This document shows positions 7,195 through 64,000 of a stretch of DNA of 64,000 nt, one piece after another (the first letter of the stretch is position 1; every line of letters begins with the position of its first letter). A program made the position numbers and the translations under genes. The notes under the pieces were generated by a model. It did not search any database and was not told the origin of the DNA. It saw only the letters and a program-made list of their open reading frames with translations. The stretch is from Callorhinchus milii (lineage: Eukaryota), in contig NW_024704760.1 of the NCBI RefSeq assembly GCF_018977255.1, positions 10,912,001 through 10,976,000 of the forward strand. The letters run 5' to 3'.

Positions 7195-7287
7195 CTAACA
7201 GATAGAAAGTGGGGGAAAAAAAGTTGTGAGATCGGAGGCACAAATGAGCATTTCTGCCCAACACTGCTCAATATTGCCCAATTATTC

Positions 7288-21300: not shown

Positions 21301-21357
21301 CCCAAGGAGGAGGAACAGGAGCAGTTGGTGAGAAGCTGGTGTGACCGACCCACTGAC

Positions 21358-24740: not shown

Positions 24741-25455
24741 AGGAAGGACTGCAGTGGGAACTATTACTCTGTTAGTCTACTGCAGTATCTGTGACCTTCC
24801 ACAGAGGGAATAACTTCCACAAAGCCCAGGACTGCAGTGACTTTTAGATTGAACTGAAAGTTGCAAACAGTTGAAAATGTTTCAGATGTTTTCCAGAAAC
24901 ATTGTGAAGAAACATAATGAAAAAAATATTCCATTCCCCAGGGATGGTCTACAATCGTCTCCTTGGTCTCCTTGGAGGCTGAACTGGTTTCAAGGTGACA
25001 TGGCTGGCAATGGGATGTCGGAATCGAGCCAGCCCTCTGTGATGGTCTCTAGTCTGGTTCCTGAGCCAGGCAGGTCCGCAGTATCCCAGGACACTACCGC
25101 TCACAGCACAGCCCATCGGCAGGACCTGGAAGGACACAGCCCTAACACATAGGGTGGCCCTGTCTGGGTAAGCAGTGGGAAAGCTTGCCAGACAGCATAC
25201 AGCAAACGCTTTTCTGGGGGTAGTAAACCCTTTAAAAAAAATAATAATTTGGTCTCTCAATCCATGACTGATTGTGGGACATTGCTGTGCGCAAATGGCT
25301 GCTGCCTTTCGCCCACAAAATACAGTCATACACACTTTACAGTTTATGCTTTGAAACATCTCAACTGCGCGATGAGGCGTATATGACATGTAAAGATTAT
25401 TATTATATTTGTTACTATTATAAACATATAAACAGAGAGCAGACCCTGTCCTTAC

Positions 25456-25558
25456 CCATGGCTTGTGCCAGAGCGATGACCACCTCCTGACAGGTGGTGT
25501 TCTCGTTCACCCCACAGACCACCCGCTGGATTCCGTCCACCCACACCTTGAGCTCCAT
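25456..25558 (-). CDS. RASSF7/8-family gene, first coding exon
   Basis: ATG at 25558; [35 protein letters not shown], 103 nt, donor ATGG|gtaagg. The exon begins at acceptor tttgcag|C at 25672. Spliced CDS is 1224 nt = 407 aa plus stop. Confidence 0.96.
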
Positions 25559-42186: not shown

Positions 42187-42284
42187 TTAGGGTTGCACGG
42201 AACAGGAGCTGGAGGTCGAGGAGTCATCGGGAGAAGTCATCAACTTGTCAAATTCCTGCAACGGAGGGAGACTTTCCTGAGAAC
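42187..42284 (-). CDS. MHC class I gene, probable last cytoplasmic exon
   Basis: Long pyrimidine tract and cacacag|GTTCTC; in phase 1 it reads SQESLPPLQEFDKLMTSPDDSSTSSSCSVQP*. Phase is assumed from class I convention. Confidence 0.6.
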
Positions 42285-43074
42285 CTGTGTGGGAGAGAGG
42301 GAGAGAACATGTGAGAGAGATAGAGGGTGTGTGTGTGTGTGCGTAAGTGTGAGAGAGAGTGACAGTGAGAGAGGGAATGAGAATGAGTGTGAAAGAGAGT
42401 GAGAGTGAATGAGTGTGAGCGTGAGAGAACATGGTTGAGAGTGTGAGTGCATGAGAGAGTGAGGACGTGCAAGAGTAAGAGGGAAGAGTAAGCGAGTGTG
42501 TGCGAGAGAGACAGAGAGCGTGTGAGTGTGAGAGATAGTGAGACAACCGAGAGCGTCAGTTATCAAATTATTTTGATGAGCCTAATCTCCCGCTTCCTTT
42601 CTGATGTTTGACTCCATCAACGTGTCCTATTGCTGAGCTCAGGCCAACGGCTCTATCGTTGTCAGGATTTGTTTTGACGCCTCTCTTGACTCTGGCTGTT
42701 TCCTGCCCGCGGAAACCTCCTGGTCCTGACCCACTGACTGACTCCCCGATGACTGGCAGCTCTGCACAGATCTCCTGCCATGTCTCCCTCAGCCCCTGGG
42801 CCACTGGGCAATGCCGAGGGCAATCGTTTAACACCCAGAGTCTCAGCCTCACTCAGGTTAAAATCCTGGGGCTCAAACAATGTTTGCCGCTGTCGGGAGC
42901 AGATATTTAATGTCCTCCCTGGTAAAAGCCCTCCAGGCAGCAGTTATAATATTCCTTGCATTTGATATAGCACCTTATCACATTTTTTGAGACATCTCTC
43001 AATTCACTGCTGCTGTATTTCACCCACAAAATATAGTCAATTCACTTGACAGTATATTTTGTGAGGAAGAGTAT

Positions 43075-43480
43075 ATTAGTGTACTGGCTAGAGCACTCGC
43101 CTCGCAAGCGAGAGGACACCAGTTCGATTCCTGGGCAGGGCAAAATGTTCGGCAAGTATCCTTACTCCACACGCCTCAAATTCAAGGATTATTATTATTA
43201 TATGAGCGATTATTACACAATTATTATTATTTTGTGGGCGAAACGTGGCAACCGATTGCACACGGCAGTGTCCCACAAACAGCCATGGATTGAGCGACCA
43301 AATTATTATTTATAATCTTCTTGAAGGGATTATTACCCCCAGAAAGTGATCCGCCAAACGGCTGACACCCTAATCACCGCCGGGTCAAAAGAGGCGCGTG
43401 GAGTAAGGAAACCTGCCTAACGTTTCGCTCTGCCCGGGATTCGAACCCGGGTCTTCTCGCTTGCGAGGCGAGCGCTCTCC
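43075..43480. mobile_element. Two family A SINE copies in inverted (tail-to-tail) orientation
   Basis: Plus head at about 43085-43170, minus head at about 43390-43475. Confidence 0.8.
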
Positions 43481-43669
43481 ACACTCAGCTTCGTGGTTAG
43501 AGCACTCTAATGTGTTGCTATCTCCTGTTTATTCTCTTTCTCAGCCCCACGTGAATCGCTGAGGGTTTAAAACCTTCCCTCTCACCCACTCACACACAGA
43601 CACACATACACTATCACGTACTCCTTCTCTCACACTCTTTCCCCTCTCATATTCTCCCTCATACACACA

Positions 43670-44095
43670 CTGCCGCACTCACTCACTCACTCACTCACTC
43701 ACTCACTCACTCACTCACTGCCGCACTCACTCACTCACTGCCGCACTCACTCACTCACTGCCGCACTCACTCACTCACTGTCTCACTCACTGTCTCACTC
43801 ACTNNNNNNNNNNNNNNNNNNNNNNNNNNNNNNNNNNNNNNNNNNNNNNNNNNNNNNNNNNNNNNNNNNNNNNNNNNNNNNNNNNNNNNNNNNNNNNNNN
43901 NNNNNNNNNNNNNNNNNNNNNNNNNNNNNNNNNNNNNNNNNNNNNNNNNNNNNNNNNNNNNNNNNNNNNNNNNNNNNNNNNNNNNNNNNNNNNNNNNNNN
44001 NNNNNNNNNNNNNNTCACTCACTCACTCATTGCCGCACTCACTCACTCACTGTCTCACTGCCGCACTCACTCACTCACTCACTCACTCACACCCT
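43670..44095. repeat. (ACTC)n tetranucleotide array with tgccgc interruptions, spanning an N-gap
   Basis: Direct reading; N-run 43804-44014. Confidence 0.9.
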
Positions 44096-44126
44096 CTCTG
44101 ACACATTCCCTCTCTCACAAACTCAC

Positions 44127-44156
44127 TTCCTGATGATGAACTGCTTTGTTCCGAAC
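44127..44156 (-). CDS. MHC class I gene, probable 30-nt cytoplasmic exon
   Basis: ttattttctttcag|GTTCGG...CAGGAA|gtgagt, strong sites and length divisible by 3; phase 1 gives SEQSSSSSG. Confidence 0.7.
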
Positions 44157-44592
44157 CTGAAAGAAAATAAACGGACAGTGTGAGTGACGCAGTGACACGC
44201 AATGTGTGTGCGTGTGAGCGCGTGTGAGCGCGTGGGCTGTGTCTGTGCGCTCGCTGTTAGTGTGTGTTTTTGAGTGCGTGTGGGTGGGGGTGTCCGTGTG
44301 TGTGTGCAGGTGGCACTCTTATGTGTGTTGGGGAGTGTGTTTGTGTGGGGGGAGAGGGTGTCTGTGGGAGNNNNNNNNNNNNNNNNNNNNNNNNNNNNNN
44401 NNNNNNNNNNNNNNNNNNNNNNNNNNNNNNNNNNNNNNNNNNNNNNNNNNNNNNNNNNNNNNNNNNNNNNNNNNNNNNNNNNNNNNNNNNNNNNNNNNNN
44501 NNNNNNNNNNNNNNNNNNNNNNNNNNNNNNNNNNNNNNNNNNNNNNNNNNNNNNNNNNNNNNNNNNNNNNNNNNNNNNNNNNNNNNNNNNNN

Positions 44593-44728
44593 TTGCAGCT
44601 CAGAGAGCGAAGTCTGTATCTCTTTCTCCATATAAACACAATGAGAGCGACAATGCTGATGACGAGTAGTAAAACCCCACAAACACACAGAGCCGCGATC
44701 TTTCCGGGTGTCCAGAGCACTGCGTCCC
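44593..44728 (-). CDS. MHC class I gene, connecting peptide/transmembrane exon (3' end hidden in N-gap)
   Basis: gtgacag|GGGAC; [44 protein letters not shown]: 24-residue hydrophobic helix followed by basic stop-transfer residues, in frame with alpha3. Confidence 0.85.
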
Positions 44729-44769
44729 CTGTCACCAAACACAGCAACAGCCCTGACACAGAGCCTACA

Positions 44770-47700
44770 GCCCCCCACAGCGACTGCCCCCCCACACACA
44801 GCGACTGCCCCCCCACACACACACACAGCGACTGCCCCACACACACAGCGACTGCCCCACACACACAGCGACTGCCCCACACACACACACACAGCGACTG
44901 CCCCACACACACACAGCGACTGCCCCACACACACACACACAGCGACTGCCCCCACACACACACAGCGACTGCCCCACACACACACACACAGCGACTGCCC
45001 CCACACACACACGCAGCGACTGCCCCCCACACACACACACAGCGACTGCCCCACACACACACAGCGACTGCCCCACACACACACACACACACAGCGACTG
45101 CCCCCCACACACACCACACAGCGACTGCCCCCACACACACAGCACTGCCCCCCACACACACACACAGCACTGCCCCCACACACACAGCGACTGCCCCCCA
45201 CCACCGACACACACACACCACAGCGACTGCCCCACACACACACAGCGCCCCACACACACACACACAGCGACTGCCCCCACACACACACAGCGACTGCCCC
45301 ACACACACAGCGACTGCCCCCACACACACACACAGCGACTGCCCCACACACACAGCGACTGCCCCCCCACACACACACACAGCGACTGCCCCACACACAC
45401 ACACAGCGACTGCCCCACACACACACAGCGACTGCCCCACACACACACAGCGACTGCCCCACACACACACAGCGACTGCCCCACACACACACAGCGACTG
45501 CCCCACACACACACACACACACAGCGACTGACACACACACACAGCGACTGACACACACACACACAGCGACTGACACACACACAGCGACTGACACACACAC
45601 ACACACAGCGACTGACACACACACACACACACACAGCGACTGACACACACACACACACACAGCGACTGACACACACACACAGCGACTGACACACACACAC
45701 ACACACAGCGACTGCCCCCCCACACACACACAGCGACTGCCCCACACACACACAGCGACTGCCCCACACACACACACACAGCGACTGCCCCCACACCACA
45801 CACAGCGACTGCCCCACAACACCACAGCGACTGCCCCACACACACACCAGCGACTGCCCCCACACACACAGCACTGCCCCCCCACACACACACACAGCGA
45901 CTGCCCCCACACACACACACACAGCGACTGCCCCACACACACACCACACAGCGACTGCCCCACACACACACACCACACACCACACACACAGCGACTGCCC
46001 CCACACACACACACACACACAGCGACTGCCCCACACACACACACAGCGACTGCCCCACACACACACACACAGCGACTGCCCCACACACACACACACACAG
46101 CGACTGCCCCACACACACACACAGCGACTGCCCCCCACACACACAGCGACTGCCCCCACACACACACACACACAGCGACTGCCCCCACACACACACACAG
46201 CGACTGCCCCACACACACAGCGACTGCCCCACACACACAGCGACTGCCCCACACACACACACACAGCGACTGCCCCACACACACAGCGACTGCCCCACAA
46301 CACACAGCGACTGCCCCCACACACACACACAGCACTGCCCCACACACACAGCGACTGCCCCCACACACACACACACACAGCGACTGCCCCACACACACAC
46401 AGCGACTGCCCCCACACACACACACAGCGACTGCCCCACACACACACACACAGCGACTGCCCCACACACACACAGCGACTGCCCCACACACACAGCGACT
46501 GGCCCACACACACAGCGACTGCCCCCACACACACACAGCGACTGCCCCACACACACAGCGACTGCCCCCACACACACACACACACACAGCGACTGCCCCC
46601 ACACACACACACACACACAGCGACTGCCCACACACACACACACACAGCGACTGCCCCACACACACAGCGACTGCCCCACACACACACACACACAGCGACT
46701 GCCCCACACACACACACACACAGCGACTGCCCCCACACACACACACACAGCGACTGCCCCACACACACACAGCGACTGCCCCCACCACACACACAGCGAC
46801 TGCCCCACACACATACACACAGCGACTGCCCCACACACACAGCGACTGCCCCACACACACAGCGACTGCCCCCACACACACACACACAGCGACTGCCCCC
46901 ACACACACACAGCGACTGCCCCCACACACACACACACAGCGACTGCCCCACACACACACAGCGACTGCCCCACACACACAGCGACTGCCCCACACACACA
47001 CACACACACACACAGCGACTGCCCCACACACACAGCGACTGCCCCACACACACAGCGACTGCCCCACACACACAGCGACTGCCCCACACACACACACACA
47101 CAGCGACTGCCCCCACACACACACACACAGCGACTGCCCCACACACACAGCGACTGCCCCCACACACACACACACACAGCGACTGCCCCACACACACACA
47201 CACACAGCGACTACCCCCCCACACACACACACAGCGACTGCCCCACACACACAGCGACTGCCCCACACACACACAGCGACTGCCCCACACACACACAGCG
47301 ACTGCCCCCACACACACACACAGCGACTGCCCCACACACACACACACACAGCGACTGCCCCACACACACAGCGACTGCCCCCACACACACACACAGCGAC
47401 TGCCCCACACACACAGCGACTGCCCCCACACACAGACACACAGCGACTGCCCCACACACACACACAGCGACTGCCCCACACACACACAGCGACTGCCCCC
47501 ACACACACAGCGACTGCCCCACACACACAGCGACTGCCCCACACACACACACACAGCGACTGCCCCACACACACAGCGACTGCCCCACACACACACAGCG
47601 ACTGCCCCCACACACACACAGCGACTGCCTCCACACACACACAGCGACTGCCCCCACACACACAGCGACTGCCCCCACACACACACACACACACAGCGAC

Positions 47701-47770
47701 TGCCCCCACACACACACAGCGACTTCCCCCCCACACACACAGCGACTGTCCCCCCCACACACACAGCGAC
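44770..47770. repeat. About 3-kb satellite, unit cagcgactgcccc + (ca)n of variable length
   Basis: On the order of 100 units; a sub-block at about 45520-45710 uses the variant cagcgactga. Confidence 0.97.
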
Positions 47771-48225
47771 TGCCCCCCACAAAAACACCCACACACTCCC
47801 CCCAACAAACACACCCACACACTCCCCCCCAAATACACCCACAGACACTCCCACCCCACGTGCACACTTCCCCTCCCATACACCCCCACCCAAACACACA
47901 TACTCCCCCCAAACACACACACACCCCAAACACACACACCCCCCCCAAACACACACACTCCCCCCATACACACACACCCCCCGCAAACACACACACCCCC
48001 CCAAACACACACACCCCCCCAAACACACACACTCCCCCATACACACACACCCCCCGCAAACACACACCCCCCCCCCGCAAACACACACACTCCCCCCATA
48101 CACACTCACCCCTCCCACCACACACACGCACACTTCCCTCCCCACACACCCCCTACACACAGCCCCCACACCGCACACACTCCCCCCACCCACCAACACA
48201 CAGACACTCCCCCTCCACACACAGA
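47770..48225. repeat. C/A-rich degenerate repeat (cccccaaacacacac)n
   Basis: Direct reading. Confidence 0.85.
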
Positions 48226-48236
48226 GTCTCTCTTAC

Positions 48237-48515
48237 TGCAGACCACGGTTTTCCCCTCTGGAAAACTGCTGTGTTGAACGTGGCAGCAGTAGGCGTCCTT
48301 GGAGTGGGGGGGGCTGGTGTCATGGTAGCTGGTGATCTGGTAGGTGCTGTCGTGGTTGGGGATAATGCCGGTGTTGGTGGTCTCGGGCACGTCCTGTCCC
48401 TCGTGGCGCCAAGTCACTCGCACATCCCGCGTGTAAAACCCCGTCACCAGACACACCAGGCGGTGCCCGAGGGAATTCACCATCTTAAGGGCTCTCACTG
48501 TCACCTTGGGCTTCA
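48237..48515 (-). CDS. MHC class I alpha3 (Ig C1-set) exon
   Basis: 279 nt, ctcag|TG AAG...TGC A|gtaag; VKPKVTV...LVCLVTGFYTRDVRVTW...DSTYQ...YCCHVQHSSFPE with C1-set C-W-C and GFY motifs. Confidence 0.95.
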
Positions 48516-48609
48516 CTGAGGGGGGCAAGAGGGCCAAGGTCAGGACAGCTCAGGGAAGGGGCTCGTGTTTAACCTCAGGAGGGGGGAGGTGCTAAGCGGG
48601 GCCTCGTTG

Positions 48610-49150
48610 GAGCCAAATTGGCTCCCAGGTGACCGTATGACAACCCAATATTGGAATCGAGCCAACCCTCGGAGACGGTCTCCAGTCTGGTTCACTGCAC
48701 CATGGGCACTGCTGCTCACCGCACGGCCCGGCTCCTCAGCAGGAACTTGAAGGGTAGACCAGTCACTGGGGGCAGTGAATCCTCCCCCTCACTCCCGTTA
48801 ACCTGAAAGCCAAAGCCCTAATGGGTAGGGTGGTCCCAGCCGGACAAGCAGCGGGAAAGCTGGCCAGACAGTGATACCAACGGCAAGCTCTGTGGTTTTA
48901 GCTGGTTAGACTCCAGCAGTTACCCCAATGCACACTCTGGGGTCCCCCCCAAGCCTTGAGTCTTGACAACCTGCAACTAATACTTTCTGGAATTAGGTAA
49001 ACAGGAAGTGTCCCTCCAGGGAGAGAGAGAGCACGTTCCATTCCAACCTTCTATCTCTAGGATTTTCATGCGATGCATGGAATTCTCAGCTCGGTTTGGA
49101 TACTCTTAAGCAGATGGATTTCACGTGTGTCAGACGCCCGGCTGACCCCC
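48610..49150 (+). mobile_element. Family R element, longest copy (about 540 bp)
   Basis: Contains both the 5' block (ggaatcgagccaaccc) and the 3' end (tcagacgcccggctg). Confidence 0.7.
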
Positions 49151-49545
49151 AAACAAATAGAGGGTGGGTGTGGGGGTGATTATTGGCTGTGCTGTGTGGT
49201 GAATTCAAAATCCTCGTCCTCGCCTTCAGCACCTGTCCAGGGCCTTGGGACATACTCCTGACGCCTGCTCCACCATCAGCGGTTGGGCCTTTAGCCTCTC
49301 TGCCCCCACCCTTTGGAACTCTATCCCACAGTCCCTTCACCTCGCCCTCTTTCTTGCCTCCTTCAAGACACGTCTCAAGACCCTCCTCTTCGACCGGTCA
49401 CCCTCCTACCCTCTACCCTCCACCCTCCCTGCCCTCCATGTTTCCTGATCCCAACCCCCAGCTCGGGACCAAATCCCTGACTGTCCAGCGCCCTGGGACG
49501 TTCTCCAGACATGAAAGCCGCTGTACAAATGTAATTTGTTGTTAC

Positions 49546-49821
49546 CTGTGCTGTCCAGTGCCTCCTGTTGCAGGTGTAGGTATTTGCGTAACCAGTTCAC
49601 ACAGATGCTCTCACTGTACGTCTTCTTGTACAGGTTCTCGGGCCCATTGCGATCCCACTTCTCTTTGGTGAGGCGGGCGATGGGCGAGGACGCCACCCAG
49701 GTCAGGGTCTCCATGTCAAAAGACAGCAGGTCGCGGCCGTTGAAGGCATAACTGCGGAAGCCGCGCACTGAACCATCCTCAAGCAGCTGACAGCCCGACA
49801 TGTACTGGAACACGTTCAGCC
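49546..49821 (-). CDS. MHC class I alpha2 exon
   Basis: 276 nt, gacag|GG CTG...ACA G|gtaac; FQYMSGC...YAFNGRD...TW...LTKEKW...Y...C.NWLRKY with the C101-C164 pair. Confidence 0.96.
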
Positions 49822-49904
49822 CTGTCCCCGGGAACCAGAGATACATAGTGTTACGCAGTGTTATACCGAGCTTTACACCAGCGTTTACTTCACCAGAATG
49901 ATAC

Positions 49905-50450
49905 CAAAGTTAAAAGGTTAAATCACAAGGAAAGTTTGCAAAACTTGTTCTATGTTCCCTTGAGGTTAGAAGGTTGAGGGTTGATCTAATTTAGGTTTGT
50001 AAAATAATAAAGGGATTTGATAGAGTAGATACAGAGAAACTATTTCCTCTGGTCGGGAATCCAGAACAAGGGGCGTCATCTTAAAATTAGAGACAGGACA
50101 TTTAGGAGTGAAATCAGGAGCAGTTTCTCACCCAAAGGGCAGTGGAAATCTGGAACTCTCTCCCGCAAAAGGCTGTGGATTATGGTTGGATCCATTCACA
50201 TTTTCAAGATTGAGGTGGTTAGATGTTTGTTAGGTCAGGGGATCAAGGGATATGGGCATAGGCAGGTAATTGGAATTGAGGTACAGATCAGCCATAACCT
50301 TATAGAATGGCAGAACAGGATGAGGGGCTGAATGGCCTACTCCTGTTCCTATGTCATCTGGTAAATCTCCTCTGCACCCTCTCCAAGGCCTTGATATGCT
50401 TCCTGTAATGTGGTGCCCAGAACTGGACACAATACTACAGCTGAGCCCTC
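49905..50450. mobile_element. CR1 3' end (+, to about 50353) followed by a short inverted CR1 piece
   Basis: ttagaaggttgaggggttgatct...ggctgaatggcctactcctgttcctatgt then ctctgcaccctctccaaggcc...gtgcccagaactgg. Confidence 0.8.
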
Positions 50451-50943
50451 ACGTATCACGTCAGGAGGACCTCCCAAAGCCCTTCACAGAAATTGCAACA
50501 CTCCCAGCCCAGAGCTGCATTTGAGCATCAGTCAGACGATGTGATGGCAAGTCCCAGTGCGCTGAGGGGGTGTTGGGGGGGGAATTGTCATTGTCAGAGA
50601 TGCCGTCCTTCAGATGAGCTATAAAACAAGTCTGCCTGTTCCGGTGGATGTCAAAGATCCCGCGGCGTTGTTAGAAAAGGGAAGGGAATTCCTCCCTCCC
50701 AGGGTCCTGGCCAACAATCTCCCAAGTAAAAAATAATTGGTCATTCACTCCATGGCTGTTGGTGGGGCAATTGCTGGGGGGATTTGTGCTGCCCATATGC
50801 ACCTTTCTGACTCCAAGTGAGAGCGCGACCACTGAACCCAACTGACACCCAAACAACAACAATAAATTGCCCTGATGAAGCCCTTGGTGTTGGGGGGGGA
50901 CCCCTCCGAGGGTGAACTGGGGGTGAGGGATGGAGAGACCAAC

Positions 50944-51204
50944 CTGTGTTGATGTTACTGCGTCGCATGGCAATCTTGACGTTGGCCAGGTAGAGTTTCT
51001 GTCTCTCGCTCAGTTTGACAGTCTCGCTCTCCCACTCGTCGGGCTTCAGTGCCTCCCCCATCCAGGGCTGTGTGGGACGGTTGTGGGGCCTCTCGCTGTC
51101 ATAGCGCGTGATCTGTACATCATCCAACATCCCCACGTGGGAGAAGGTGGGCAACGTATTATTGCTATACATCGCCGTGTAGTAATAACGCAGAGAGTGC
51201 GGCT
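50944..51204 (-). CDS. MHC class I alpha1 exon
   Basis: 261 nt, ttacag|AG CCG...ACA G|gttgg; KPHSLRYYYTAM...VGMLDDVQITRYDS...QPWM...W...AMRRSN. Confidence 0.96.
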
Positions 51205-51209
51205 CTGTA

Positions 51210-51530
51210 ACACACACACAGTATACACATGCATTACAGTGTAGACACACACACAATATACACACAATATGTTGTATACATAATACAGTATACAAACACA
51301 CACAATAGATACACACAATACAGTATACATACACACAAGCAATACAGTATATACATATACACAATATACACATAATACAGTATACACACTAAATACAGTA
51401 TACACATACACAATCTACACATAGAATACAGTATATATACTCATACAATATACACACACCAGTATATACACACAGAATACTGTATATATACACATACACA
51501 ATATACCCACCCAATACCGCATATACACAC
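51210..51530. repeat. cacaatacagtata-type CA/TA minisatellite
   Basis: Direct reading; continues at 51860-51916 and 54610-54645. Confidence 0.85.
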
Positions 51531-51539
51531 ACACACAAT

Positions 51540-51860
51540 AATAATAATAATAATCCTTGCATTTGATATAGCGCTTTTCACGTCGGGAGGACGTCCCAAA
51601 GCGCTTCACAGAACACACTGTAAAGTGAATTGACTGTATATTTGTGGGCGAACGCGGCAGCCAATTGCGCACAGCAATGTCCCACAAACAGTCGTAGATT
51701 GAAAATGACCAATTTATTATTGTTTTTGGTTTTGGAGGGATTATTATTAGGCTCTGTGTGGAGTAAGGAAACTTGCCCAAGGTTTCGCCCTCTGCCTGGA
51801 ATTGAACTCAGGTCTCTCACTTGCAAAGCGAGTGCTCTAACCACTGAGCTACAGGACTCC
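51540..51860 (-). mobile_element. Family A SINE, young subfamily
   Basis: Nearly identical to 59745-60012. Confidence 0.9.
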
Positions 51861-51916
51861 ACAATATACACATGCAATACAGTATACACAATATACACAC
51901 ACACAATACAGTATAC

Positions 51917-54610
51917 AACAACAACAAAATTACATTTATAGAGCGCTTTTCACGTCGGGAGGACGTCCCAAGGCGCTGGACGGTCAGGGGTCAGGGCCCG
52001 AGCATGGGGGAGGGGTGGTGTAGGGGCGAGGGAAAGCAGAGAGGTGGGAGGGCGACCAAAGGCACGGTCGAAGAGGAGGGTCTTGAGACCGGCCTTGAAG
52101 GAGGCGAGGGAGGAAGCGAGGCGAAGGGACCGTGGGATGGAGTTCCAGAGTGTGGGGGCAGAGAGCCTGAAAGCCCGGCCACCGATGGTGGGGCGGATCG
52201 GACGTGGAGCAGTCCAGAGTCTGATGAACGGAGGGAGATGGGTAGGGGATAGCAGGTCAGAGAGGTAGGAGGGGACAAGGCCATGGATGGCATGGCAAGG
52301 CCATGTACATGAGCTGCAGAGTTTTGGATGATCTGCAGTTTGTGAAGGGAAGAGTTGGGAAGGCCGATGAGGAGGAGTTCCTGTAATCGAGCCTTGATGT
52401 GACGAATGCGTGGGGTGAGGGTTTGGGGGCCTGAGGGGTGAGGCAGTGATGGAGTCTGCAATGTTTGCGGAGGTGGTGGTAGGCAGTGCCGGTCATGGCG
52501 CGGATGTGGGGGAGAAAGGACAGTTCAGGGTCAAACAAGACCCCCAGGTTCCTGACCGGCTTAGTGAGGTTGAGTGTGCAGCCGTGGAGGCTGATGCTGT
52601 CAGCGCCCGAGGTGCGGAGGCACTGGCGTGAGCCAATCAGGAGGGCCTCGGTCTTGCTGACGTTGAGTTGGAGAAAGTTGTCCCTCATCCAGGACTTGAT
52701 GTCGGACAGGCAGTCGGTCAGGACACCAGTAATCCTGGAGTTCAGGGTGGAGGCAGAGAGATAGAGTTGGGTGTCATCCGCATACATGTGGAAAGTTACC
52801 CCATGTCTGTGGATGATGTCACCAAGGGGGAGCATGTAGAGGAGGGGACCGAGGACAGAGCCCTGAGGAACACCGCACGAGACGGTGCGGGGACTGGAGG
52901 ACAAGCCATTTGCCGCGACGAAGTGGAGGCGGTGTGAAAGGTCGGACCTGAACCAGTCAAGGACAGAACCTTGAAGATTGAGGTGGGAGGAGAGGCGGTG
53001 GAGGAGGATTGAATATTCCACAGTATCAAAGGCGGCGGAGAGGTCGAGGAGGACGAGGTGGCAGAGGGAGCCCTGGTCACACATGGTCAGGTTGTCATTT
53101 GTGACCTTGACCAGAGCAGTTTCCGTTCATGGAGGAGTTCATGGAGGGAGTGGGAGGAGAGGAAAGAGCGAAGCTGAGAGGCAACGGCTCTCTTAGATAG
53201 AAAAGGGAGATGGGCCGGTAACTGGACAGCTATGATTGGTCAAGGGAAGGTTTCTTCAAGGTGGGGCTGATAGTGGCTGTTTTGAGGGGGGAAGGAACAG
53301 TGCCAGATGACAGGGAAGGTTGATGATGTCGGAAAGTAGTGGGGCGAGGAGGTGGAGCTGCGATTTAAGGAGAGGGGTGGGGCTGGGGTCCAGGGAGCAG
53401 GTGGTGGGCTTCATGGAGGATATGGTGGTGATGAGGAGGGGGTGGCATGTTCAAAGTGTGGAAGGACAGATGGGTAGTGGTCGGAATGTGTGGGGGAGTA
53501 GGGAGGGAGTGGAAGTTGGGAGGGCAGTGGCAGCTGAGCGGATTCCCTGGATTTGGGACTCGCAATGGGAGTCGGAGGAAAGTATCTGCGTTGCGTGGCG
53601 GGGAGAGCGGAGGAGCCGGTTGGTGGTGGAGAACAGGAGCCCGGGGTTGCCCTTCACCTCCAGGATTAACCTGAAGTAGAAGGACAATTTGGCTGAGGCG
53701 AGAGCGGAGCGGTAGTTCTTATGAGGTCCAGCCAGATGTGGCGGTGGACCGTTAGGCCGGATTTGAGCCAAGTGCATTTGGCAGCTGCACCTGGCCTTAA
53801 GCGAGCGGAAATGGCTGGTGAACCAGGGTGAGGATCGGGAATAGGAGGCAGTTCATGAGGAGAGGGGGGCAAAGGCGTTGAGTGTGATGGAGAGGGCGCT
53901 GTGGAGAGAGTAAACGCAGAGGATGGGTTGTTGCGAGAGGTGGGCCAGAGGGGGAGGAGTTCAGAGGACTCCATATCAGCGGAGAGGGATTGCGGGAGAT
54001 CTTCTTCCACGGGCAGAAGATGGTGGTAGGTTTGGAGGCAGTGGGGAGACGGATATGGGAGTCCCCCCCGAGAGAGATGAAATGGTGGTCAGAGATGTGA
54101 CATCCGAGACGCTGAGGCCCCAGGTGATCACCAGGTCGAGTGGGTGACCGTGGGTGTGGGTAGCAGAGTGGATGTGGAGGGAGAGGTTGAGAGGAGAGGA
54201 GAGAGAAGTGTGAGGAGGTGGAGCAGGAGGGGGTGAAGTGGAGGTTGAAGTTGCCAAGGATGATGAGGCGGTTGGAGCAGAGGCAGAGGGAGGCGAGGAG
54301 GCTGGAGATGTCAGAGATGAAGGTGGGGGAGGATTTTTTGGGGGGGGGGATAAATTAGGATAAGGTTTAGTGAGAGGTGGGAGGGATGGCAGAGGATAAG
54401 GTGTTCAAAAGAGGGGAATATGAGTCAGTGGAGTGGGGGGATACGGCCAGTGACACCCTGGAGATGAGGGCCACACAACTGCCACGACGGTTGGGGCGTG
54501 GGGCATGGTGGTAGGTGTAGCCGGGTGGTGGGGCCTCAGTGAGGCGGGAGTTGACACCTGGAGTGATCCAGGTTTCCGTGAGGGCCATAATATCAACCGT
54601 ACAACATAGC
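51917..54610 (-). mobile_element. L2 LINE, most of ORF2 (endonuclease to RT to 3' tail), frameshifted
   Basis: DIMALTETW (EN), [35 protein letters not shown] (RT), tail gcgccttgggacgtcctcccgacgtgaaaagcgctctataaatgtaa(ttg)n. Confidence 0.93.
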
Positions 54611-55226
54611 AACACACACAATACAGTATACACACCCCCAACAACAACAACAACAACAACAAGATTCCATTTATAGAGCGCCTTTCACGTCGGGAGGACG
54701 TCCCAAGGCGCTGCACAGTTGGGTCAGGACAACTTGCTCCCCCTGCCACCCACCCCCACACTCTCCCCCCACGCCCTCCCCTGCCCCCACCCACTCTCCC
54801 CCACCTCTCTCTCGTTCTCACGCAGGAGAGCGCCCCCAGACCACTTGACCGTGGCGGACATGGCTCCACGCTGGGGGGAGAGGGAGGTGACCGTAGACAC
54901 CACCGAAGAGGAAGCTCTTCAGACGCAATCTGAATATGGGGAAGAAAGGGGCAAAGCGGAGGGATCCAGGAAGTGTTCCAGAGTTACACACACACACAAC
55001 CTCGAGCCCCTCAACACCACCACTCCGGAGAGAGAGAGAGAGAGTGGGGGTGGGGGAGAGTAGGGAGGGAGAGAGGGAGGGGGGGGAGAGCAGGGAGGGG
55101 GGAGAGCAGGGAGGGGGGGGAGAAATGAGGGAGAGAGGGGGGTGGGGGAGAGCAGGGGAGAAAGAGAGAGAGAGAGAGGAGGGAGAGGAAACGCGGGGGG
55201 GGGGGGGAGGTTTGGAGGTAACTTAC

Positions 55227-55275
55227 TGCCACAGACAGAGGTCAGGCAGAGAGCGATGGGGAGCAGCGCCCACAT
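55227..55275 (-). CDS. MHC class I leader (signal peptide) exon
   Basis: aagATGTGG; MWALLPIALCLTSVCG, 49 nt, phase-1 donor GGCA|gtaagt, in frame with alpha1. Confidence 0.85.
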
Positions 55276-58606: not shown

Positions 58607-58765
58607 TTACTCAGAGACTTTTAAGCCTTCCATGATCAGGTTCAGTTCATAGCAGAGGGTTTCATAGCGGTAAGCCATCCGAATCTGAGACACGTTTGTC
58701 TTCTGAATGCTGTTACCTTCCGGGCCCTCCTTACGGTAGTTAGGTCCCAGGAATTTGATCTTCTC
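58607..58765 (-). CDS. AMPD1: AMP deaminase 1, last coding exon
   Basis: gacag|GAG; [52 protein letters not shown], 159 nt. Confidence 0.95.
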
Positions 58766-59744
58766 CTGTCAGGCAAGAGTGAAAGGGTAGAGGTTGAAGT
58801 TACAGAAGGAGACAGACAGACAGGTCGTGAGGTGCATTAGGAATCCAGGACCTGCTGTGTTAGAGAGCTGGCACTAAGGGTTAGCAGCTGCACAGAGAAT
58901 TATTACAGAAAAGATATGATCAACCAAGGTAGAAGATGCTCCAGCAGAGCTGGGGGGAGCTTCCCATTGTCAGATGTTCCATCCTTCGTTTTATTTTTGG
59001 TCTGATACACACAGAAACCCACCTAGACATGGAAATATCGCCCACGTTCGCCCACAAATATACAGTCAATTCACTTTACAGTGTGTTCTGTGAAGCGCTT
59101 TGGGACGTCCTCCTGACGTGAAAAGCGCTATATCAAATGCAAGGATTATTATTATTATTATTATTATAAATCCCAGAGATAGGTTGTTGGAATGGAATGC
59201 GCTCTCTCTCTCTCTCTCTCTCTCCCTGGAGGGAAGCAGCACTTACCTAATTCTGAAATGTATTAGGCGCAGGTTGGCAAGAGCCAAGGCTTGGGTACTA
59301 GGTTATATATGCAATATATGGTTAGTTCAAATCCACAAAGGTCTGATCGAGATGTTTTAACATCAAGGCTATGGTTGGAATTCTTCAGGAATATTTTAGA
59401 TTTCTTTTAATATAGAAATAGTCGCCCTGTTAAAAGCAGCCCATCCCTCCCTGACCACCACCCACCCCCGGCAAACCTCTGCCCATTGCTAAACTTCCCA
59501 ACTGGGCCACAAAATACACAGTCAGTTCACTTTTCAGTATGTTCTGTGACGTGCTTTGAGACGATGAAGTCTCAGCAACATGATAAGGCTATAACATATG
59601 CACGGATTTTTATTGTAACTCTCTCCGGGAGAGATTTCTGGAAGATAATATTGCTTTTCATATCAGAAGCTGATTATTGTAATTCAGTTGTCACGGTTTC
59701 TGATTGAGAACATTTCAGGAAGGAAGTAATAATAATAATAATAA

Positions 59745-60012
59745 TCCTTGCATTTGATATAGCGCTTTTCACGTCTTCTAAACGTCTCAAAGCGCTTCAC
59801 AGAATATGCTGTAAAGTGAATTGACTGTATATTTGTTGGCGAACGTGGCAGCCAATTGCGCACAGCAATGTCCCACAGACAGTCGTGGATTGAAAATGTC
59901 CAATTTATTATTGTTTTTGGTTTTGGAGGGATTATTATTAGGCTCTGTGTGGAGTAAGGAAACTTGCCCGAGGTTTCACCCTCTGCCTGGAATTGAACTC
60001 AGGTCTCTCACT
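59745..60012 (-). mobile_element. Family A SINE, young subfamily (5' truncated)
   Basis: Shares the diagnostic ttattgtttttggttttggagggattattattaggctctgtg segment with 51540-51860. Confidence 0.9.
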
Positions 60013-60469
60013 GAGTAAAAGTGAGTATTAAAAGCCGGATGTGGGTTAGGTTGTATTTGGGTACGGGACACCTCTAGTCACAGGTACCTGATGTGTTGCT
60101 TACAAAGGAACAACATTGTAAGTGAATTGCACCAAAAGGACAAATTGATCACACCAGAGGTACCTTCTGCGTCACAAAGGGTGGTCAAACACTGCGATAC
60201 AGTGACACGACTCCTGGTAATTCTAAGTGACTAGCTCAGGGGCACTGAGGCCAATTGTAGCAACTCCACCTCCAGCCCTTGGTTCAGATCATCCTACTGT
60301 GTCCTGGCAAGTGTCTTAGTGATGTTTTCTTGATTCACGAGACTATCAAGGACCCCCCAACCCCACACTCAAATAAAGCAGCTACACATTGAGCTGAAAC
60401 ACGAGGGGGTCTGTGGTGTAGGAAGCACTGAATACGTTGTGTAGGACTAACTATGCCGACAGGAAGTAC

Positions 60470-60580
60470 CTGCTCAGAGAAGCCACTCTGCAGGACGCTG
60501 TTTCGGGCGATCTCACACATGTCACAGGTGCTCAGCTTGAAGACCTGGGCTGCGATGGCATACTCCTCCATCAGAGGTTC
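60470..60580 (-). CDS. AMPD1: AMP deaminase 1, penultimate exon
   Basis: 111 nt, gacag|GAA...CAG|gtact; [37 protein letters not shown]. Confidence 0.96.
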
Positions 60581-60639
60581 CTGTCAACAGACAACACACG
60601 TTTACCATCGTCGATCCACGCTGAAATCAGACAGTTAAC

Positions 60640-60825
60640 AAAAGGCAAAATACTGCAGTTGCTGGAAATCTGGAATAAAAACAAGTGGTTGGGAACACTC
60701 AGCAGGTCAGGCAGCATCTATGGAGAGAAGAAAGTGAGTTAACGTTTCAGATCGATGACCTTTCATCAGAGATCTGCTGTCTGAGCTGCTGAGTGTTCCC
60801 AATGACATCTGTTTCTATTTCAGTC
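60640..60825. repeat. Imperfect palindromic dispersed repeat
   Basis: gggaacactcagcagg at about 60690 pairs with ctgctgagtgttccc at about 60786; same family as 7288-7410. Confidence 0.75.
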
Positions 60826-61767
60826 CGTCAGTTGTTGTTGTTGGTTCCATTGAACACCACAAGATCTCAGCGGTATCAGCTCTAACAATAGAACTAATCT
60901 ACCAGTTCAGCACAAACCATAGAATTAAATAGTTATGTTGAGTGATGCAGCATGGAAACTAGTCTGTGCTAATGTTTATATCCAAACGAACCCCCAACTA
61001 AACCACCCTCATATTTCCTCTATTCCTTTCTCTCTCTCATGTATGTATAATATTTTCCTCATAAATAAGAGAGTCTGGGAGCCCCGGTTCAGCCTCCCAT
61101 TCAGATCAGGTCAGTGAAGGCATCCTCTTGTCTTGAAAGGCACAGTATAAATGTAAATTAATGTTGCTGAAACAGCTATTATATTTATGCCCCCTTTGTT
61201 CAAATTCTTTCATAAACTTGGAGGGAATTAATCAAGTCTCCTCTCAATTGCCCCATCTCTGGAGAGGAGCAATCTTTCTAAATAACTATCGCCTCATCTC
61301 TGGCAACATCCTGGTTAATCTACGCTGGCCTCTCTCCAATGCTACACTATAATAATAATAATCCTGCATTTGATATGGCACTTTATCACATCTTCAAAGC
61401 GCTTCACAGAATATACTGTAAAGTGAATTCACTATACTCTGTGGACGAAACGCAGCAGCCAATTGTACACAGCGGTGTGCCACAAACAACCATGGATTGA
61501 ATTGGCCAAATTATTGCTATTTTCATTTATTTATTTTGAAGCGATTATTACCCCTGGAAAATAATAAAAAAAACTATTATCCCTTCCTGCAGTGTAGTGA
61601 CCAGAACTGTACAAGTACTCCCTATGTGGTTTTATATAAATGTAACAATACCTCTGTACTTTTATACTCTATTCCTCTGGACATAAAATACCTCCTCCAC
61701 CGGGAGCAGCAGTGATGACTGAAGGACATGAGTGAGTCCTGGTGCCCAGCCCGAGCCCCACACTTAC

Positions 61768-61941
61768 CTTGGTGTAATGGAACTGCATGGGGTCATCAGT
61801 GGAGAGTGAGACCATCAGCCCTTTCTGCATGTACTCCAGGAGTGGATTCTTGGCGTACTCCAGGAACAGGCTGTTGTTGCTGAGGGGAGACATGGCGATT
61901 GGGATCTGGGTCAGGAAGTACAGGTACTGCAGGACAGGGCT
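61768..61941 (-). CDS. AMPD1: AMP deaminase 1 exon (catalytic SLSTDDP motif)
   Basis: 174 nt, ctccag|AGC...AAG|gtaagt; [58 protein letters not shown]. Confidence 0.97.
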
Positions 61942-61974
61942 CTGGAGGGACACAGCAGCTTGGTCAGCCTTAAT

Positions 61975-62312
61975 AATAATGATAATAATCCTTGCATCTG
62001 ATATAGCGCTTCATGTCTTCAAGACGACTCAGGCTTCACAGAATATACTGTAAAGTGCAGTCTGTTTTTTGGGTGAAATGCGGCAGCCAATTGTGCACGG
62101 CAGCGTCCCACAAACAGTCGTGGGTTTAGCGACCGAATTACTATTATTATTATTGATTTTTTTTAAGGAAAAGTGATCCGCCGATTGACAAACAACAGGA
62201 CTACTTACTGACTGCTAAGTAAGCAGAAGCGTGTGGAGTAAGGAAACTTGCCCAACGTATCGCCCTGCCCGGGAATCGAACCCGGGTCTCCTCGCTTGTG
62301 AAGCGAGTGCTC
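61975..62312 (-). mobile_element. Family A SINE, full length
   Basis: Tail, core and head on the reverse strand. Confidence 0.85.
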
Positions 62313-63481
62313 TAATCTAATCCCTAAAATTTTTGTTTTGAATGTTCCATCTAAGTAGGTCACCACCACAACTGTTCGTCAAATCTCAATTCACAGCCAT
62401 CCTCACAACTAAACAGATAGCGTTGTATCGTGGAAACAAGAGGTTCTAAAATGAGATTTAAGACTTTCCACCCCTCCAACTTTCACTCTTATCCTGATAT
62501 CTCTGTACACAGGATGTACCGGACGCTACACTGTGTGAGGGCCGCTATATCAATGCAAGTTGTTGTTGTTACTCCAGGAGAAGAGGACACACGGTCAAAC
62601 TGGCTCCTCTTCCCCACTAGTGACCATTTTGTAACCTGTGAGCCTGGTCAGTTAGTGTCAACTAGCATCAGCCATTGTGGATGGGCACATTTAAGTCCGA
62701 TCCAGTCCACGTACAAATTCCACACAGTTACACACTCCCATAGGATCACTAGGTGGTCCACAGACAGAGGAACTTGACAGACTTTCTAGCTCCCCAACAC
62801 AAGGACGCTGAGGCCAACTGCACCATCTCAATAGATAACACAGCACTGAACCTGTGCCGGTATAATCAGCACTCGACCAAATAAGGGGAGTGACAGACCA
62901 AAAGACATTTAACTCTTATTTGGCATGAAGCCCCTTTGTGCAGGAGAATACCGAAATGTTAGGAGAATCAGGAAACAAATGGCACATTTATTTGAAAGTC
63001 GTTCCAAACAACTAATGAGAAACTTCCTTCTTTTTTTGAATAGTGCCATGGGATCTTTAACTTCCATCTGAACAGGCAGATGGGGAGCTCAGTTTAACGT
63101 CTCATTCAAAAGACAGCACCTCTGACAGTGTTGCATTGGAGCATCATCTCAGACAATGTGATTCCAAGTCCCGACGTGGGGCTTGAACCCACATGTTTCT
63201 GACTGGGAGGCGAGAGCGCTACCACTGAGGTAGGCCGACACAATGTGCCAACGTGCCTTTAAGTAAAACTGGAATTGGAGTAACTTTAAACAGATAACCA
63301 AGTCTGAATGGGCGCTTTGATTGAGATGCCACCAGCAGTAACAGGAGTAAATCCCCGAGCAAGAATCTGACTGTAACATTCCCTGTGTGTTAACAGTACC
63401 CGTTTATTTCATACCGATTACTTGGTGGTGCTGATCTCTGAACGCTGCAGACATCAGCACGGCTGCACTCTCCACACTGAC

Positions 63482-63602
63482 CTTTTTCAGATTGAGTCCG
63501 TGCGAGATGTTGTCCGCAGTCATGAATGCCGTCAGGAGATGTGTCACGGCTCCTGCCTCACCACAGTGCGGACGGAACAGAAACGTGTTCATCCCCCTTT
63601 CC
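63482..63602 (-). CDS. AMPD1: AMP deaminase 1 exon (RPHCGEAG motif)
   Basis: 121 nt, ttcag|G GAA...AAG|gtcagt; [47 protein letters not shown] and GLNLKK are AMPD1-type rather than AMPD2/3. Confidence 0.95.
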
Positions 63603-64000
63603 CTGAAGAAATAATAATAATAATCCTTGCATGTGATACAGAGCCTTATCAGATCTTCCTAGACGTCTCAAAGCGTCTCACAGTACATACTGTAAAGTGA
63701 ATTGAGCAAATTATTTTGTGAGTGAAACTTCTTCGCCAAAGTACGGCACAAGACACAAGTGGAGAAATACAGGAACGAAGGGAAAGCCTTCTCTGGCACA
63801 GACCAGTCCAGGGCATTATATACCTTCCCCCACCACCGTCACACCCCCTCTCCTCATCCCACTTTGCTGTCTTTTCACCGTTCTGCAGTGCAGAGCAGTG
63901 AACTCTTTTTCACCCACTGCAAGTGAGACAGTCTGCACGGACTCGAGATCAGAAAAGAGAAGTTGAAAATATAGGTCAGTTTTAATTACTGTACTTTTCA

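What the first reader, a model, noticed from the sequence alone, without database searches (positions are those of the whole stretch)
42187..55275. Lone, intact MHC class I gene in the BCAS2-AMPD1 (NRAS/1p13-type) block, not in an MHC gene context
Seen: leader, alpha1, alpha2, alpha3 and TM exons splice in phase 1 with canonical GT-AG sites and no stops or frameshifts. No second class I copy and no TAP/PSMB/TAPBP genes occur in the window. Established: BCAS2 and AMPD1 flank DENND2C next to NRAS at human 1p13, and no class I gene is present there. 1p13 belongs to the RAS/neurotrophin paralogon (1p13, 11p15, 12p12-13, 19q13), whose 19q13 member carries the class I-like FCGRT near RRAS/NTF4. Inference: this is either an ancient class I lineage retained in that paralogon or a lineage-specific translocation. 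Either bears on class I origins. I cannot assign it to a named chondrichthyan lineage (UAA-UFA) by eye.
Basis: partly seen in the sequence, partly recalled or inferred. Interest (0 to 1): 0.9.

Follow-up and report, generated by a model that had tools for sequence, protein, structure and literature searches.

The report
Elephant-fish UDA class I gene outside MHC
This is a real, expressed class I gene of the elephant fish (Callorhinchus milii), but it belongs to an already described nonclassical lineage (most likely UDA) that sits inside the MHC in sharks and rays, so its place between AMPD1 and BCAS2 looks like a chimaera-lineage relocation, not a relic of class I origins.

Summary
One class I gene lies on the minus strand at 42187-55275, with leader, alpha1, alpha2, alpha3, TM and two cytoplasmic exons, all in phase 1. 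One gap hides the last 8 nt and the donor of the TM exon. An independently deposited 378-aa protein of this species matches the visible exons on both sides, so the frame is continuous. The flanks are an AMP deaminase gene, a RASSF8-like gene (not DENND2C) and BCAS2.

The gene is already in RefSeq and UniProt. In trees it is sister, with 100/98 support, to a one-per-species nonclassical lineage of sharks and rays. That lineage includes nurse shark QGX07421.1 and the sawfish "MHC-Ib" gene about 75 kb from B2M. This fits the published UDA lineage.

The groove keeps 7 of 9 peptide-end residues and is nearly invariant. Variation among six C. milii records lies in alpha3 and TM, so the gene is nonclassical. 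The resemblance to MR1 is superficial.

In eight elasmobranch species the RASSF8-like gene lies on a different chromosome from the UDA-like and other class I genes; in sawfish it abuts BCAS2, as in the window. The best reading is a DNA-level relocation in holocephalans, not a paralogon relic. Interest is modest.

The parts
42187..55275 (-). Whole class I gene, ATG to stop. Equals RefSeq XP_042197998.1 and UniProt V9KZF7-type proteins of Callorhinchus milii.
   Evidence: The annotated gene span of 13089 bp on GCA_018977255.1 scaffold MU249850.1 equals this span.
55227..55275 (-). Exon 1: leader MWALLPIALCLTSVCG plus the first base of codon 17.
   Evidence: Donor GTAAGT, phase 1.
50944..51204 (-). 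Exon 2: alpha1 domain, 261 nt.
49546..49821 (-). Exon 3: alpha2 domain, 276 nt.
48237..48515 (-). Exon 4: alpha3 domain (Ig C1-set), 279 nt.
44593..44728 (-). Exon 5: connecting peptide, TM and start of the tail. 136 nt are visible; the exon runs on into the gap.
   Evidence: By residue count, 8 more nt and the donor are hidden.
44371..44592 (.). Assembly gap hiding the 3' end of exon 5 and its splice donor.
   Evidence: Not filled.
44127..44156 (-). Exon 6: cytoplasmic, 30 nt, AG/GTGAGT.
43804..44014 (.). Assembly gap inside the last intron, in a (CACT)n microsatellite.
42187..42284 (-). Exon 7: cytoplasmic tail and the TAA stop.
   Evidence: Exons 6 and 7 joined equal residues 338-378 of P0001.
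44740..47780 (.). About 3 kb of minisatellite, CAGCGACTGCCCC(AC)n, filling the alpha3-TM intron.
52260..53126 (-). LINE reverse-transcriptase fragment in intron 1.
   Evidence: RVT_1, 5e-20.
58610..63658 (-). 3' part of the upstream AMP deaminase gene. ORF pieces at 63407-63658, 61672-62010 and 60338-60583 match the AMP_deaminase profile; a further ORF at 58610-58768 is taken as the last coding exon from its sequence and from the annotated gene end, and was not scanned against Pfam. The gene ends about 3.3 kb upstream of the class I ATG.
   Evidence: The AMPD1 assignment rests on the position beside BCAS2 and on a C-terminus recalled from memory.
17427..25558 (-). RASSF8-like gene. Exons at 25456-25558, 21358-22244 and 17427-17559, plus at least one more exon. 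It is the downstream neighbour of the class I gene.
4071..12171 (-). BCAS2 exons 1-4. The gene continues off the left end of the window.

Best explanation
The gene is the Callorhinchus milii member of an old nonclassical class I lineage of cartilaginous fish, most likely the one published as UDA.

What it encodes. A normal membrane-bound class I heavy chain. It presumably pairs with beta2-microglobulin. Its groove keeps the residues that clamp peptide ends, and the rest of the groove is almost frozen across chimaeras, sharks and rays. It probably shows a narrow, conserved set of peptides to T or NK-type receptors, in the manner of HLA-E/Qa-1 or the fish Z lineage, rather than sampling diverse peptides.

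Where it sits. The gene was moved as genomic DNA, with its introns kept. It lies in the AMPD1 - RASSF8-like - BCAS2 block, a conserved non-MHC block. The shark and ray orthologues lie in the MHC class Ib cluster near B2M and BRD2.

Shown: gene structure, evidence of expression, lineage membership, groove conservation, and the different chromosomal contexts.

Inferred: the direction of the move (out of the MHC, in the holocephalan lineage), peptide binding, and beta2m pairing.
For: Structure and frame.

Expression: several UniProt 'MHC class I protein' records (V9KZF7, V9KY55, V9KY31, V9KYL6) and two RefSeq models exist for this gene.

Lineage:
- The profile search finds one relative per elasmobranch species at 42-50% identity, then a drop to about 30%.
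- In careful trees, window + P0003 are supported at 100/100. They are sister to the elasmobranch clade (100/99), and the whole clade is supported at 100/98. This holds when UAA-type, Z, UEA-like, tetrapod and MR1 sequences are included.
- No other representative among the best 150 of 1.84 billion proteins enters the clade.

Naming:
- The clade holds QGX07421.1, 'nonclassical MHC class I antigen' of nurse shark.
- It also holds the sawfish gene LOC127585849, marked MHC-Ib next to B2M and BRD2.
- Verissimo 2023 places single-copy UDA in that cluster (PMC10751288).

Groove:
- Y7, R84, T143, K146, W147, Y159 and Y171 are kept. Y59 is E in the two holocephalan sequences, and position 123 is L.
- 26 of 42 groove positions are invariant in all 11 sequences compared.

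Not classical: 25 positions vary among six C. milii records. Of these, 21 lie in alpha3 or CP/TM and only one lies in alpha2.

Constraint: dN/dS against P0003 is 0.39 for alpha1 and 0.48 for alpha2.

Fold: the model has pLDDT 91 and a class I heavy-chain fold.

Context:
- The RASSF8-like orthologue and the class I genes are on chromosomes of different lengths in eight species: Heterodontus, Hemiscyllium, Carcharodon, Pristis, Mustelus, Hemitrygon, S. canicula and Rhincodon.
- In sawfish the RASSF8-like gene abuts BCAS2, as it does here.
- NRAS-block gene symbols are absent from the published gene lists of three elasmobranch MHC chromosomes.
Against: - The two J Immunol papers that define UDA and UEA could not be read. 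The name 'UDA' therefore rests on Verissimo 2023, database names, and my memory of the 2020 abstract.
- Polarity cannot be settled by parsimony. There is one holocephalan state, one elasmobranch state, and no outgroup.
- The MHC of C. milii is on small unplaced scaffolds (PMC10751288). Linkage to MU249850.1 at chromosome scale is therefore not excluded.
- The elasmobranch AMPD1 to RASSF8-like interval itself could not be read. Only 10 kb of flank was available.
- The six protein variants could mean further copies elsewhere.
- C. milii lacks the usual N86 glycosylation sequon and has E at position 59, so ligand handling may differ from that of the elasmobranch members.
Confidence: 0.72

Rival explanations
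1. Duplicative transposition. C. milii keeps one or more further UDA copies, possibly in its MHC, and the window copy is an extra, dispersed one.
For: Six distinct protein records at 93-99.7% identity exist for 'this' gene. Two of them carry a one-residue TM deletion. From memory of the 2020 abstract, UDA is multicopy in the ratfish. P0003 is a second holocephalan sequence at only 61-68% identity.
Against: Only one RefSeq model from the current assembly falls in the 90% cluster, and no other C. milii relative appeared in three searches. The 87% 'paralogue' P0002/P0011 is a mis-modelled copy of the same locus from the older assembly. The old and new assemblies differ in alpha3, so allelic variation can explain much of the diversity.
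Confidence: 0.2
2. Ancient retention. The lineage arose, or was kept since the genome duplications, on the RAS/neurotrophin paralogon, and the elasmobranch copy later moved into the MHC.
For: Parsimony alone cannot set the direction. The deep branching of the lineage is unresolved, and it groups weakly with the bony-fish Z lineage rather than with UAA-type genes. The neighbouring RASSF8-like gene fits a RAS-linked paralogon (plus my own knowledge that RASSF7 lies near HRAS and RASSF8 near KRAS).
Against: [quoted passage not shown] In both sharks and rays the orthologue lies in the same Ib cluster by B2M and BRD2. No class I gene is reported outside the MHC in three elasmobranch genomes. The gene is a typical late-type class I with all peptide-end residues, not a divergent form.
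Confidence: 0.07
3. Assembly artefact. The contig carrying the leader to TM exons (44593-55474) is bounded by gaps on both sides and was wrongly placed into this scaffold.
For: Gaps lie at 44371-44592 and at 55475-55757 / 55775-55906.
Against: The last coding exon (42187-42284) is on the contig that runs to the RASSF8-like gene and BCAS2, interrupted only by a single N at 32505. Exons on both sides of both internal gaps join into one deposited 378-aa protein. In the older, separately built assembly the class I and RASSF8-like models have adjacent RefSeq numbers, XP_007908419 and XP_007908422. This last point is suggestive only.
Confidence: 0.04

Closest known systems
UDA, the nonclassical class I lineage of cartilaginous fish (Almeida et al. 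2020, J Immunol 204:892; Verissimo et al. 2023, PMC10751288)
   Same: It forms a clade with the one-per-species elasmobranch genes, including a nurse shark 'nonclassical' record and the sawfish MHC-Ib gene by B2M/BRD2. The peptide-end residues are kept. The groove is nearly invariant. Polymorphism in alpha1 and alpha2 is low. The lineage is present in chimaeras.
   Different: Here the gene is not in an MHC gene context; it lies between AMPD1 and RASSF8-like/BCAS2. Y59 is E. The N86 glycosylation sequon is missing and an NNT sequon at residues 15-17 appears instead.
HLA-E / Qa-1 and the bony-fish Z lineage (class I molecules with a conserved groove)
   Same: They share a class I fold with peptide-end anchors and a groove frozen over long evolutionary times. 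This suggests a fixed ligand set.
   Different: There is no orthology. Z-lineage consensus groove residues differ from those of this lineage at 23 of 42 positions, and the deep branching is unresolved. No ligand is known.
MR1 (the source of NCBI's automatic name for this gene)
   Same: Sequence and fold scores are as high as for any class I molecule.
   Different: The ligand-binding K43 is N here and R9 is Y. MR1 falls with tetrapod class I at 100/98. The top PDB score owed 21 bits to a fused beta2m. MR1 alone scores 180-185 bits, against 182 for the chain 8kcv_A ('MHC class I antigen') and 177 for shark UAA.
Class I genes that left the MHC (CD1, MR1 and FcRn in mammals; teleost L, S and P lineages; tammar wallaby class I)
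   Same: A nonclassical class I gene embedded among unrelated genes on a non-MHC segment.
   Different: This would be a case in cartilaginous fish. In the elasmobranchs studied so far, all class I genes were reported inside the MHC.
Classical class I (UAA) of cartilaginous fish, e.g. nurse shark 6LUP
   Same: The domain plan and the peptide-end residues.
   Different: The clades are separate (the UAA-type representative P0301 scores 358 bits to 6LUP). There is no groove polymorphism. No TAP or PSMB neighbours were seen, though I did not search for them directly.

Membership tests
MHC class I heavy chain | alpha1-alpha2 superdomain plus a C1-set alpha3 domain | tested here: met
   Pfam MHC_I 4e-39 and C1-set 4e-16. 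The AlphaFold model has pLDDT 91 and matches class I chains at E about 3e-29.
MHC class I heavy chain | One exon per domain, phase-1 introns, and the disulfide cysteines 101-164 and 203-259 | tested here: met
MHC class I heavy chain | Pairing with beta2-microglobulin | not testable with these tools
   Inferred from the fold only.
UDA lineage (cartilaginous fish) | Forms one clade with the low-copy nonclassical genes of sharks and rays | tested here: met
   Support 100/98 in two careful trees and SH-aLRT 96 in the 119-row tree. Named UDA reference sequences from the defining paper were not available.
UDA lineage (cartilaginous fish) | Eight of nine peptide-end residues kept (figure recalled from the 2020 abstract) | tested here: inconclusive
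   Elasmobranch members keep 8 of 9, with position 123 as L. C. milii and P0003 keep 7 of 9, with Y59E as well.
UDA lineage (cartilaginous fish) | The other groove residues are conserved across species, and the gene is mono- or oligomorphic | tested here: met
   26 of 42 groove positions are invariant in 11 sequences. Only one alpha2 position and two N-terminal positions vary among six C. milii records.
UDA lineage (cartilaginous fish) | MHC linkage | tested here: inconclusive
   Not met locally: the gene is flanked by AMPD, RASSF8-like and BCAS2 on a 13.3-Mb scaffold. Chromosome-scale linkage to the unplaced C. milii MHC scaffolds is unknown.
Classical class I (UAA) | High polymorphism in alpha1/alpha2 and close linkage to TAP and PSMB8/9 | tested here: not met
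   It forms a clade separate from the UAA-type sequences.
MR1 | Lysine 43 for Schiff-base ligands, and a clade with MR1 | tested here: not met
   Position 43 aligns to N. MR1 groups with tetrapod class I.
Bony-fish Z lineage | The Z-specific invariant groove | tested here: not met
   The consensus residues differ at 23 of 42 groove positions. A sister relation is weak, at 89/68.

The most novel reading that the evidence does not exclude
The AMPD1 - RASSF8-like - BCAS2 site is the original home of this lineage, or holocephalans preserve an old linkage between the RAS/neurotrophin paralogon and class I genes. In that case the elasmobranch pattern of 'all class I in the MHC' would be derived, and at least one class I lineage would predate, or have escaped, the single-locus origin proposed for the MHC.
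Probability: 0.08. Interest if true: 0.75.

Novelty: already known. Interest (0 to 1): 0.33.

Why it matters
The gene and its lineage are already on record, so nothing new is added about what kinds of class I molecules exist.

What may be new is the address. Verissimo et al. 2023 found every class I gene of sharks and rays inside the MHC. They used that to argue that all MHC genes began linked, and they noted that chimaeras were data-poor. Here a chimaera carries its member of a lineage more than 400 million years old in a conserved non-MHC block.

Class I genes could therefore leave the MHC early in cartilaginous-fish history too. The elasmobranch pattern is not universal for the class. This gives a clean, datable case for studying how a nonclassical class I gene works away from the antigen-processing genes.

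Tried and rejected
1. MR1 kinship. This was suggested by NCBI's name and by the top PDB hit. I rejected it for three reasons: the top chain is a beta2m fusion, K43 is N, and MR1 groups with tetrapod class I.

2. A second paralogue at 87% identity (P0002/P0011). I rejected it. These are Ensembl mis-models of the same locus, with an N-terminus translated from the intron-1 microsatellite.

3. Orthology with the bony-fish Z lineage. It was suggested by the 119-row tree. It is not supported, because the groove residues differ and the support is weak.

4. Reading the defining J Immunol papers (PMC7002201, PMC8454915, PMID 31932500). They are not held. The Venkatesh 2014 supplements are not held either.

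5. Direct look at the elasmobranch AMPD1 to RASSF8-like interval. Only 10 kb of flank can be fetched. No class I or AMPD exons were found in the sawfish and Heterodontus loci. The look-ups for P0002 and P0018 failed.

6. Placing the block on an MHC paralogon chromosome. Chromosome lengths suggest that it is not on the listed para-1 chromosomes of catshark and sawfish, but this is only a size argument.

7. Repeats that could explain the move. Only SINEs and simple repeats were found.

8. Fold search. It could not tell class I subtypes apart.

Full report
**What is there.** The window comes from Callorhinchus milii, assembly GCA_018977255.1, scaffold MU249850.1 (13.26 Mb), near 10.95 Mb.

On the minus strand I find seven exons:

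| Exon | Coordinates (+ strand) | Note |
|---|---|---|
| Leader | 55227-55275 | ATG at 55275 |
| alpha1 | 50944-51204 | 261 nt |
| alpha2 | 49546-49821 | 276 nt |
| alpha3 | 48237-48515 | 279 nt |
| CP/TM | 44593-44728 | 136 nt visible |
| Cytoplasmic | 44127-44156 | 30 nt |
| Last | 42187-42284 | ends in TAA |

All introns are phase 1 and every visible junction is AG/GT. Pfam gives MHC_I at 4e-39 and C1-set at 4e-16. An AlphaFold model has pLDDT 91 and matches class I heavy chains. tblastn finds no second class I copy in the 64 kb.

**The gaps, tested first.**
- Gap 43804-44014 lies inside the last intron, in a (CACT)n run, and touches no coding base.
- Gap 44371-44592 abuts the TM exon. The donor cannot be seen, and the visible frame stops two bases into codon 334.
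- I tested continuity without reading the hidden letters. The visible exons match residues 1-333 of the deposited 378-aa proteins: P0006 exactly, and P0001 except for K17E.
- The two cytoplasmic exons, spliced, match residues 338-378 at 100% identity.
- Four codons therefore bridge the gap. That means 8 exon nt plus the donor, a 144-nt exon, and phase 1 kept.
- The same result ties the gap-bounded contig (44593-55474) to the contig that carries the last exon, the RASSF8-like gene and BCAS2.
- An ungapped comparison incidentally printed one residue of two allelic records just past the last visible codon. I neither use nor repeat it.

**Surroundings.**
- Upstream lie the last exons of an AMP deaminase gene whose product is 738 aa. 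It ends about 3.3 kb from the class I ATG, and two further gaps lie in between.
- The AMPD1 assignment rests on its position and on a C-terminus I recall from memory.
- Downstream lies a RASSF8-like gene, not DENND2C, at 25558->17427.
- BCAS2 exons 1-4 follow at 12171->4071.
- The ten longest unexplained ORFs, nine of them between the RASSF8-like start and the class I gene, have no Pfam family.

**Is it known?** Yes.
- The protein is XP_042197998.1. Its 90% cluster also holds the UniProt records V9KZF7, V9KY55, V9KY31 and V9KYL6 ('MHC class I protein') and the older XP_007908419.1.
- The 87%-identical P0002/P0011 are mis-modelled versions of the same locus.

**Which lineage?**
- A profile search finds one close relative per species at 42-50% identity in sharks and rays. 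Identity then drops to about 30% for other shark class I genes.
- The relatives come from Heterodontus, Pristiophorus, Ginglymostoma, Mustelus, Chiloscyllium, Hemiscyllium, Cetorhinus, Scyliorhinus, Pristis, Hemitrygon, Hypanus, Mobula and skates.
- In a careful tree, the window gene plus a transcript from run SRR6291258 (P0003, 61-68% identity, presumably another chimaera) are supported at 100/100. They are sister to the elasmobranch clade (100/99), and the whole clade is supported at 100/98.
- I then added the best 150 representatives from 1.84 billion proteins.
- These include UAA-type sequences (P0301 scores 358 bits to nurse shark 6LUP). They also include the bony-fish Z lineage (lungfish AAF15304.1, bichir ZKA, sturgeon, carp), UEA-like genes, amphibians, amniotes and MR1.
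- The clade stays intact at 100/98 and nothing else enters it.
- The clade contains QGX07421.1, 'nonclassical MHC class I antigen' of nurse shark.
- It also contains the sawfish gene 'H-2 Q10 alpha chain-like' (LOC127585849). Verissimo et al. mark that gene MHC-Ib at 13.17 Mb of chromosome 34, about 75 kb from B2M and 120 kb from BRD2.
- That paper places single-copy UDA in exactly this cluster and says some Ib lineages are shared with holocephalans. I therefore call the gene C. milii UDA.
- The defining paper could not be read. My memory of its abstract is that UDA keeps 8 of 9 peptide-end residues, has its other groove residues conserved, is oligomorphic, and is present in chimaeras. That agrees with what I computed.

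**How it probably works.**
- The groove keeps Y7, R84, T143, K146, W147, Y159 and Y171. Position 123 is L across nearly the whole lineage, and Y59 is E in the two holocephalan sequences.
- 26 of 42 groove positions are identical in all 11 sequences compared, which span chimaera, sharks and rays.
- Among six C. milii records, 25 positions vary: 12 in CP/TM, 9 in alpha3, 2 at the mature N-terminus, 1 in alpha2 and 1 in the leader.
- dN/dS against P0003 is 0.39 for alpha1, 0.48 for alpha2 and 0.86 for alpha3.
- This is the pattern of a nonclassical presenter of a fixed ligand set, most likely peptides. It resembles HLA-E/Qa-1 or the Z lineage in principle, but the Z groove differs at 23 of 42 positions.
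- The MR1 resemblance is not specific. The top PDB chain is a beta2m fusion, MR1 alone scores like 8kcv_A ('MHC class I antigen') and shark class I, K43 is N here, and MR1 groups with tetrapod class I.

**Location.** Elasmobranch members lie on the chromosome that carries all the other class I genes:
- Heterodontus: 74.47 Mb, with class I genes on both sides.
- Mustelus: 140.55 Mb.
- Chiloscyllium punctatum: 81.30 Mb.
- Hemiscyllium: 49.33 Mb.
- Pristis: 19.91 Mb.

The orthologues of the RASSF8-like neighbour (54-60% identity) lie on other chromosomes:

| Species | RASSF8-like chromosome (Mb) | Class I chromosome (Mb) |
|---|---|---|
| Heterodontus | 79.33 | 74.47 |
| Hemiscyllium | 58.72 | 49.33 |
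| Carcharodon | 173.48 | 115.85 |
| Pristis | 42.96 | 19.91 |
| Mustelus | 58.72 | 140.55 |
| Hemitrygon | 181.70 | 214.36 |
| S. canicula | 147.04 | 163.47 |
| Rhincodon | 45.17 | 25.07 |

- In sawfish the RASSF8-like gene abuts BCAS2 on the same strand, as in the window.
- The symbols ampd1, nras, bcas2, csde1, trim33, sike1, ngf and tshb do not occur in the published gene lists of the white shark, catshark and sawfish MHC chromosomes.
- The flanks of the C. milii gene are therefore a conserved non-MHC block, and the gene's orthologues are MHC residents.
- Because the two are orthologues, their common ancestor had one location, so one lineage moved.
[quoted passage not shown] A move in the holocephalan line is therefore the better reading.
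- The move was at the DNA level, because the introns are retained.
- Parsimony alone cannot prove the direction. Chromosome-scale linkage in C. milii is unknown, because its MHC is on unplaced scaffolds.

**Verdict.**
The gene is not a newly found ancient lineage; it is the known UDA-type gene. The 'paralogon relic' reading is unlikely.
- The non-MHC address in a chimaera is a modest point and possibly unreported. It qualifies the statement that cartilaginous-fish class I genes all sit in the MHC.

Noticed in passing
window 17427-25558 (-): A RASSF8-like gene sits where human has DENND2C. Orthologues at 54-60% identity exist in many sharks and rays and are distinct from RASSF8/8b (42-46%). This looks like a third RAS-block-linked N-terminal RASSF paralogue. 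From my own knowledge, RASSF7 lies by HRAS and RASSF8 by KRAS. It may be lost or unrecognised in tetrapods.
   Followed up: partly
window 44740-47780: About 3 kb of minisatellite, in units of roughly 18-26 nt of the form CAGCGACTGCCCC(AC)n, fills the alpha3-TM intron. Strong C/A strand bias.
   Followed up: no
window 55458 and 56371: GAAAGTGAAAG, an ISRE/IRF-E-like motif, occurs only twice in the 64 kb. Both copies lie within 1.1 kb upstream of the class I ATG, but inside GA-rich simple repeats next to assembly gaps.
   Followed up: partly
window 50944-51204 (alpha1 exon): The C. milii protein lacks the usual N86 glycosylation sequon: it reads N-I-N, where P0003 and the elasmobranch members examined (nurse shark, sawfish) read N-x-S/T. 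Its only sequon is NNT at mature residues 15-17.
   Followed up: partly
window 48237-48515 and 44593-44728: Variation among six C. milii records, and divergence from P0003, concentrate in alpha3 and CP/TM (alpha3 dN/dS 0.86). The groove domains are nearly fixed. This could reflect a co-evolving receptor contact, relaxed constraint, or hidden copies.
   Followed up: partly
window 55227 (last base of the leader exon): The genome encodes K at residue 17, with a split codon A|AG. Five of the six deposited proteins have E. This looks like an allelic A/G difference at the exon's last base.
   Followed up: no
window 52260-53126 (-); 1034-1630 (-): LINE fragments: RVT_1 in intron 1 of the class I gene, and an endonuclease fragment near BCAS2. 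tRNA-derived SINE copies lie at 51537-51809, 59042-59162 and 59728-60000.
   Followed up: no
L003 (Logan run SRR6291258, transcript): A second holocephalan-type UDA transcript at 61-68% protein identity, with dS about 0.4. The species is unknown. It could be an orthologue in another chimaera or an old paralogue.
   Followed up: partly
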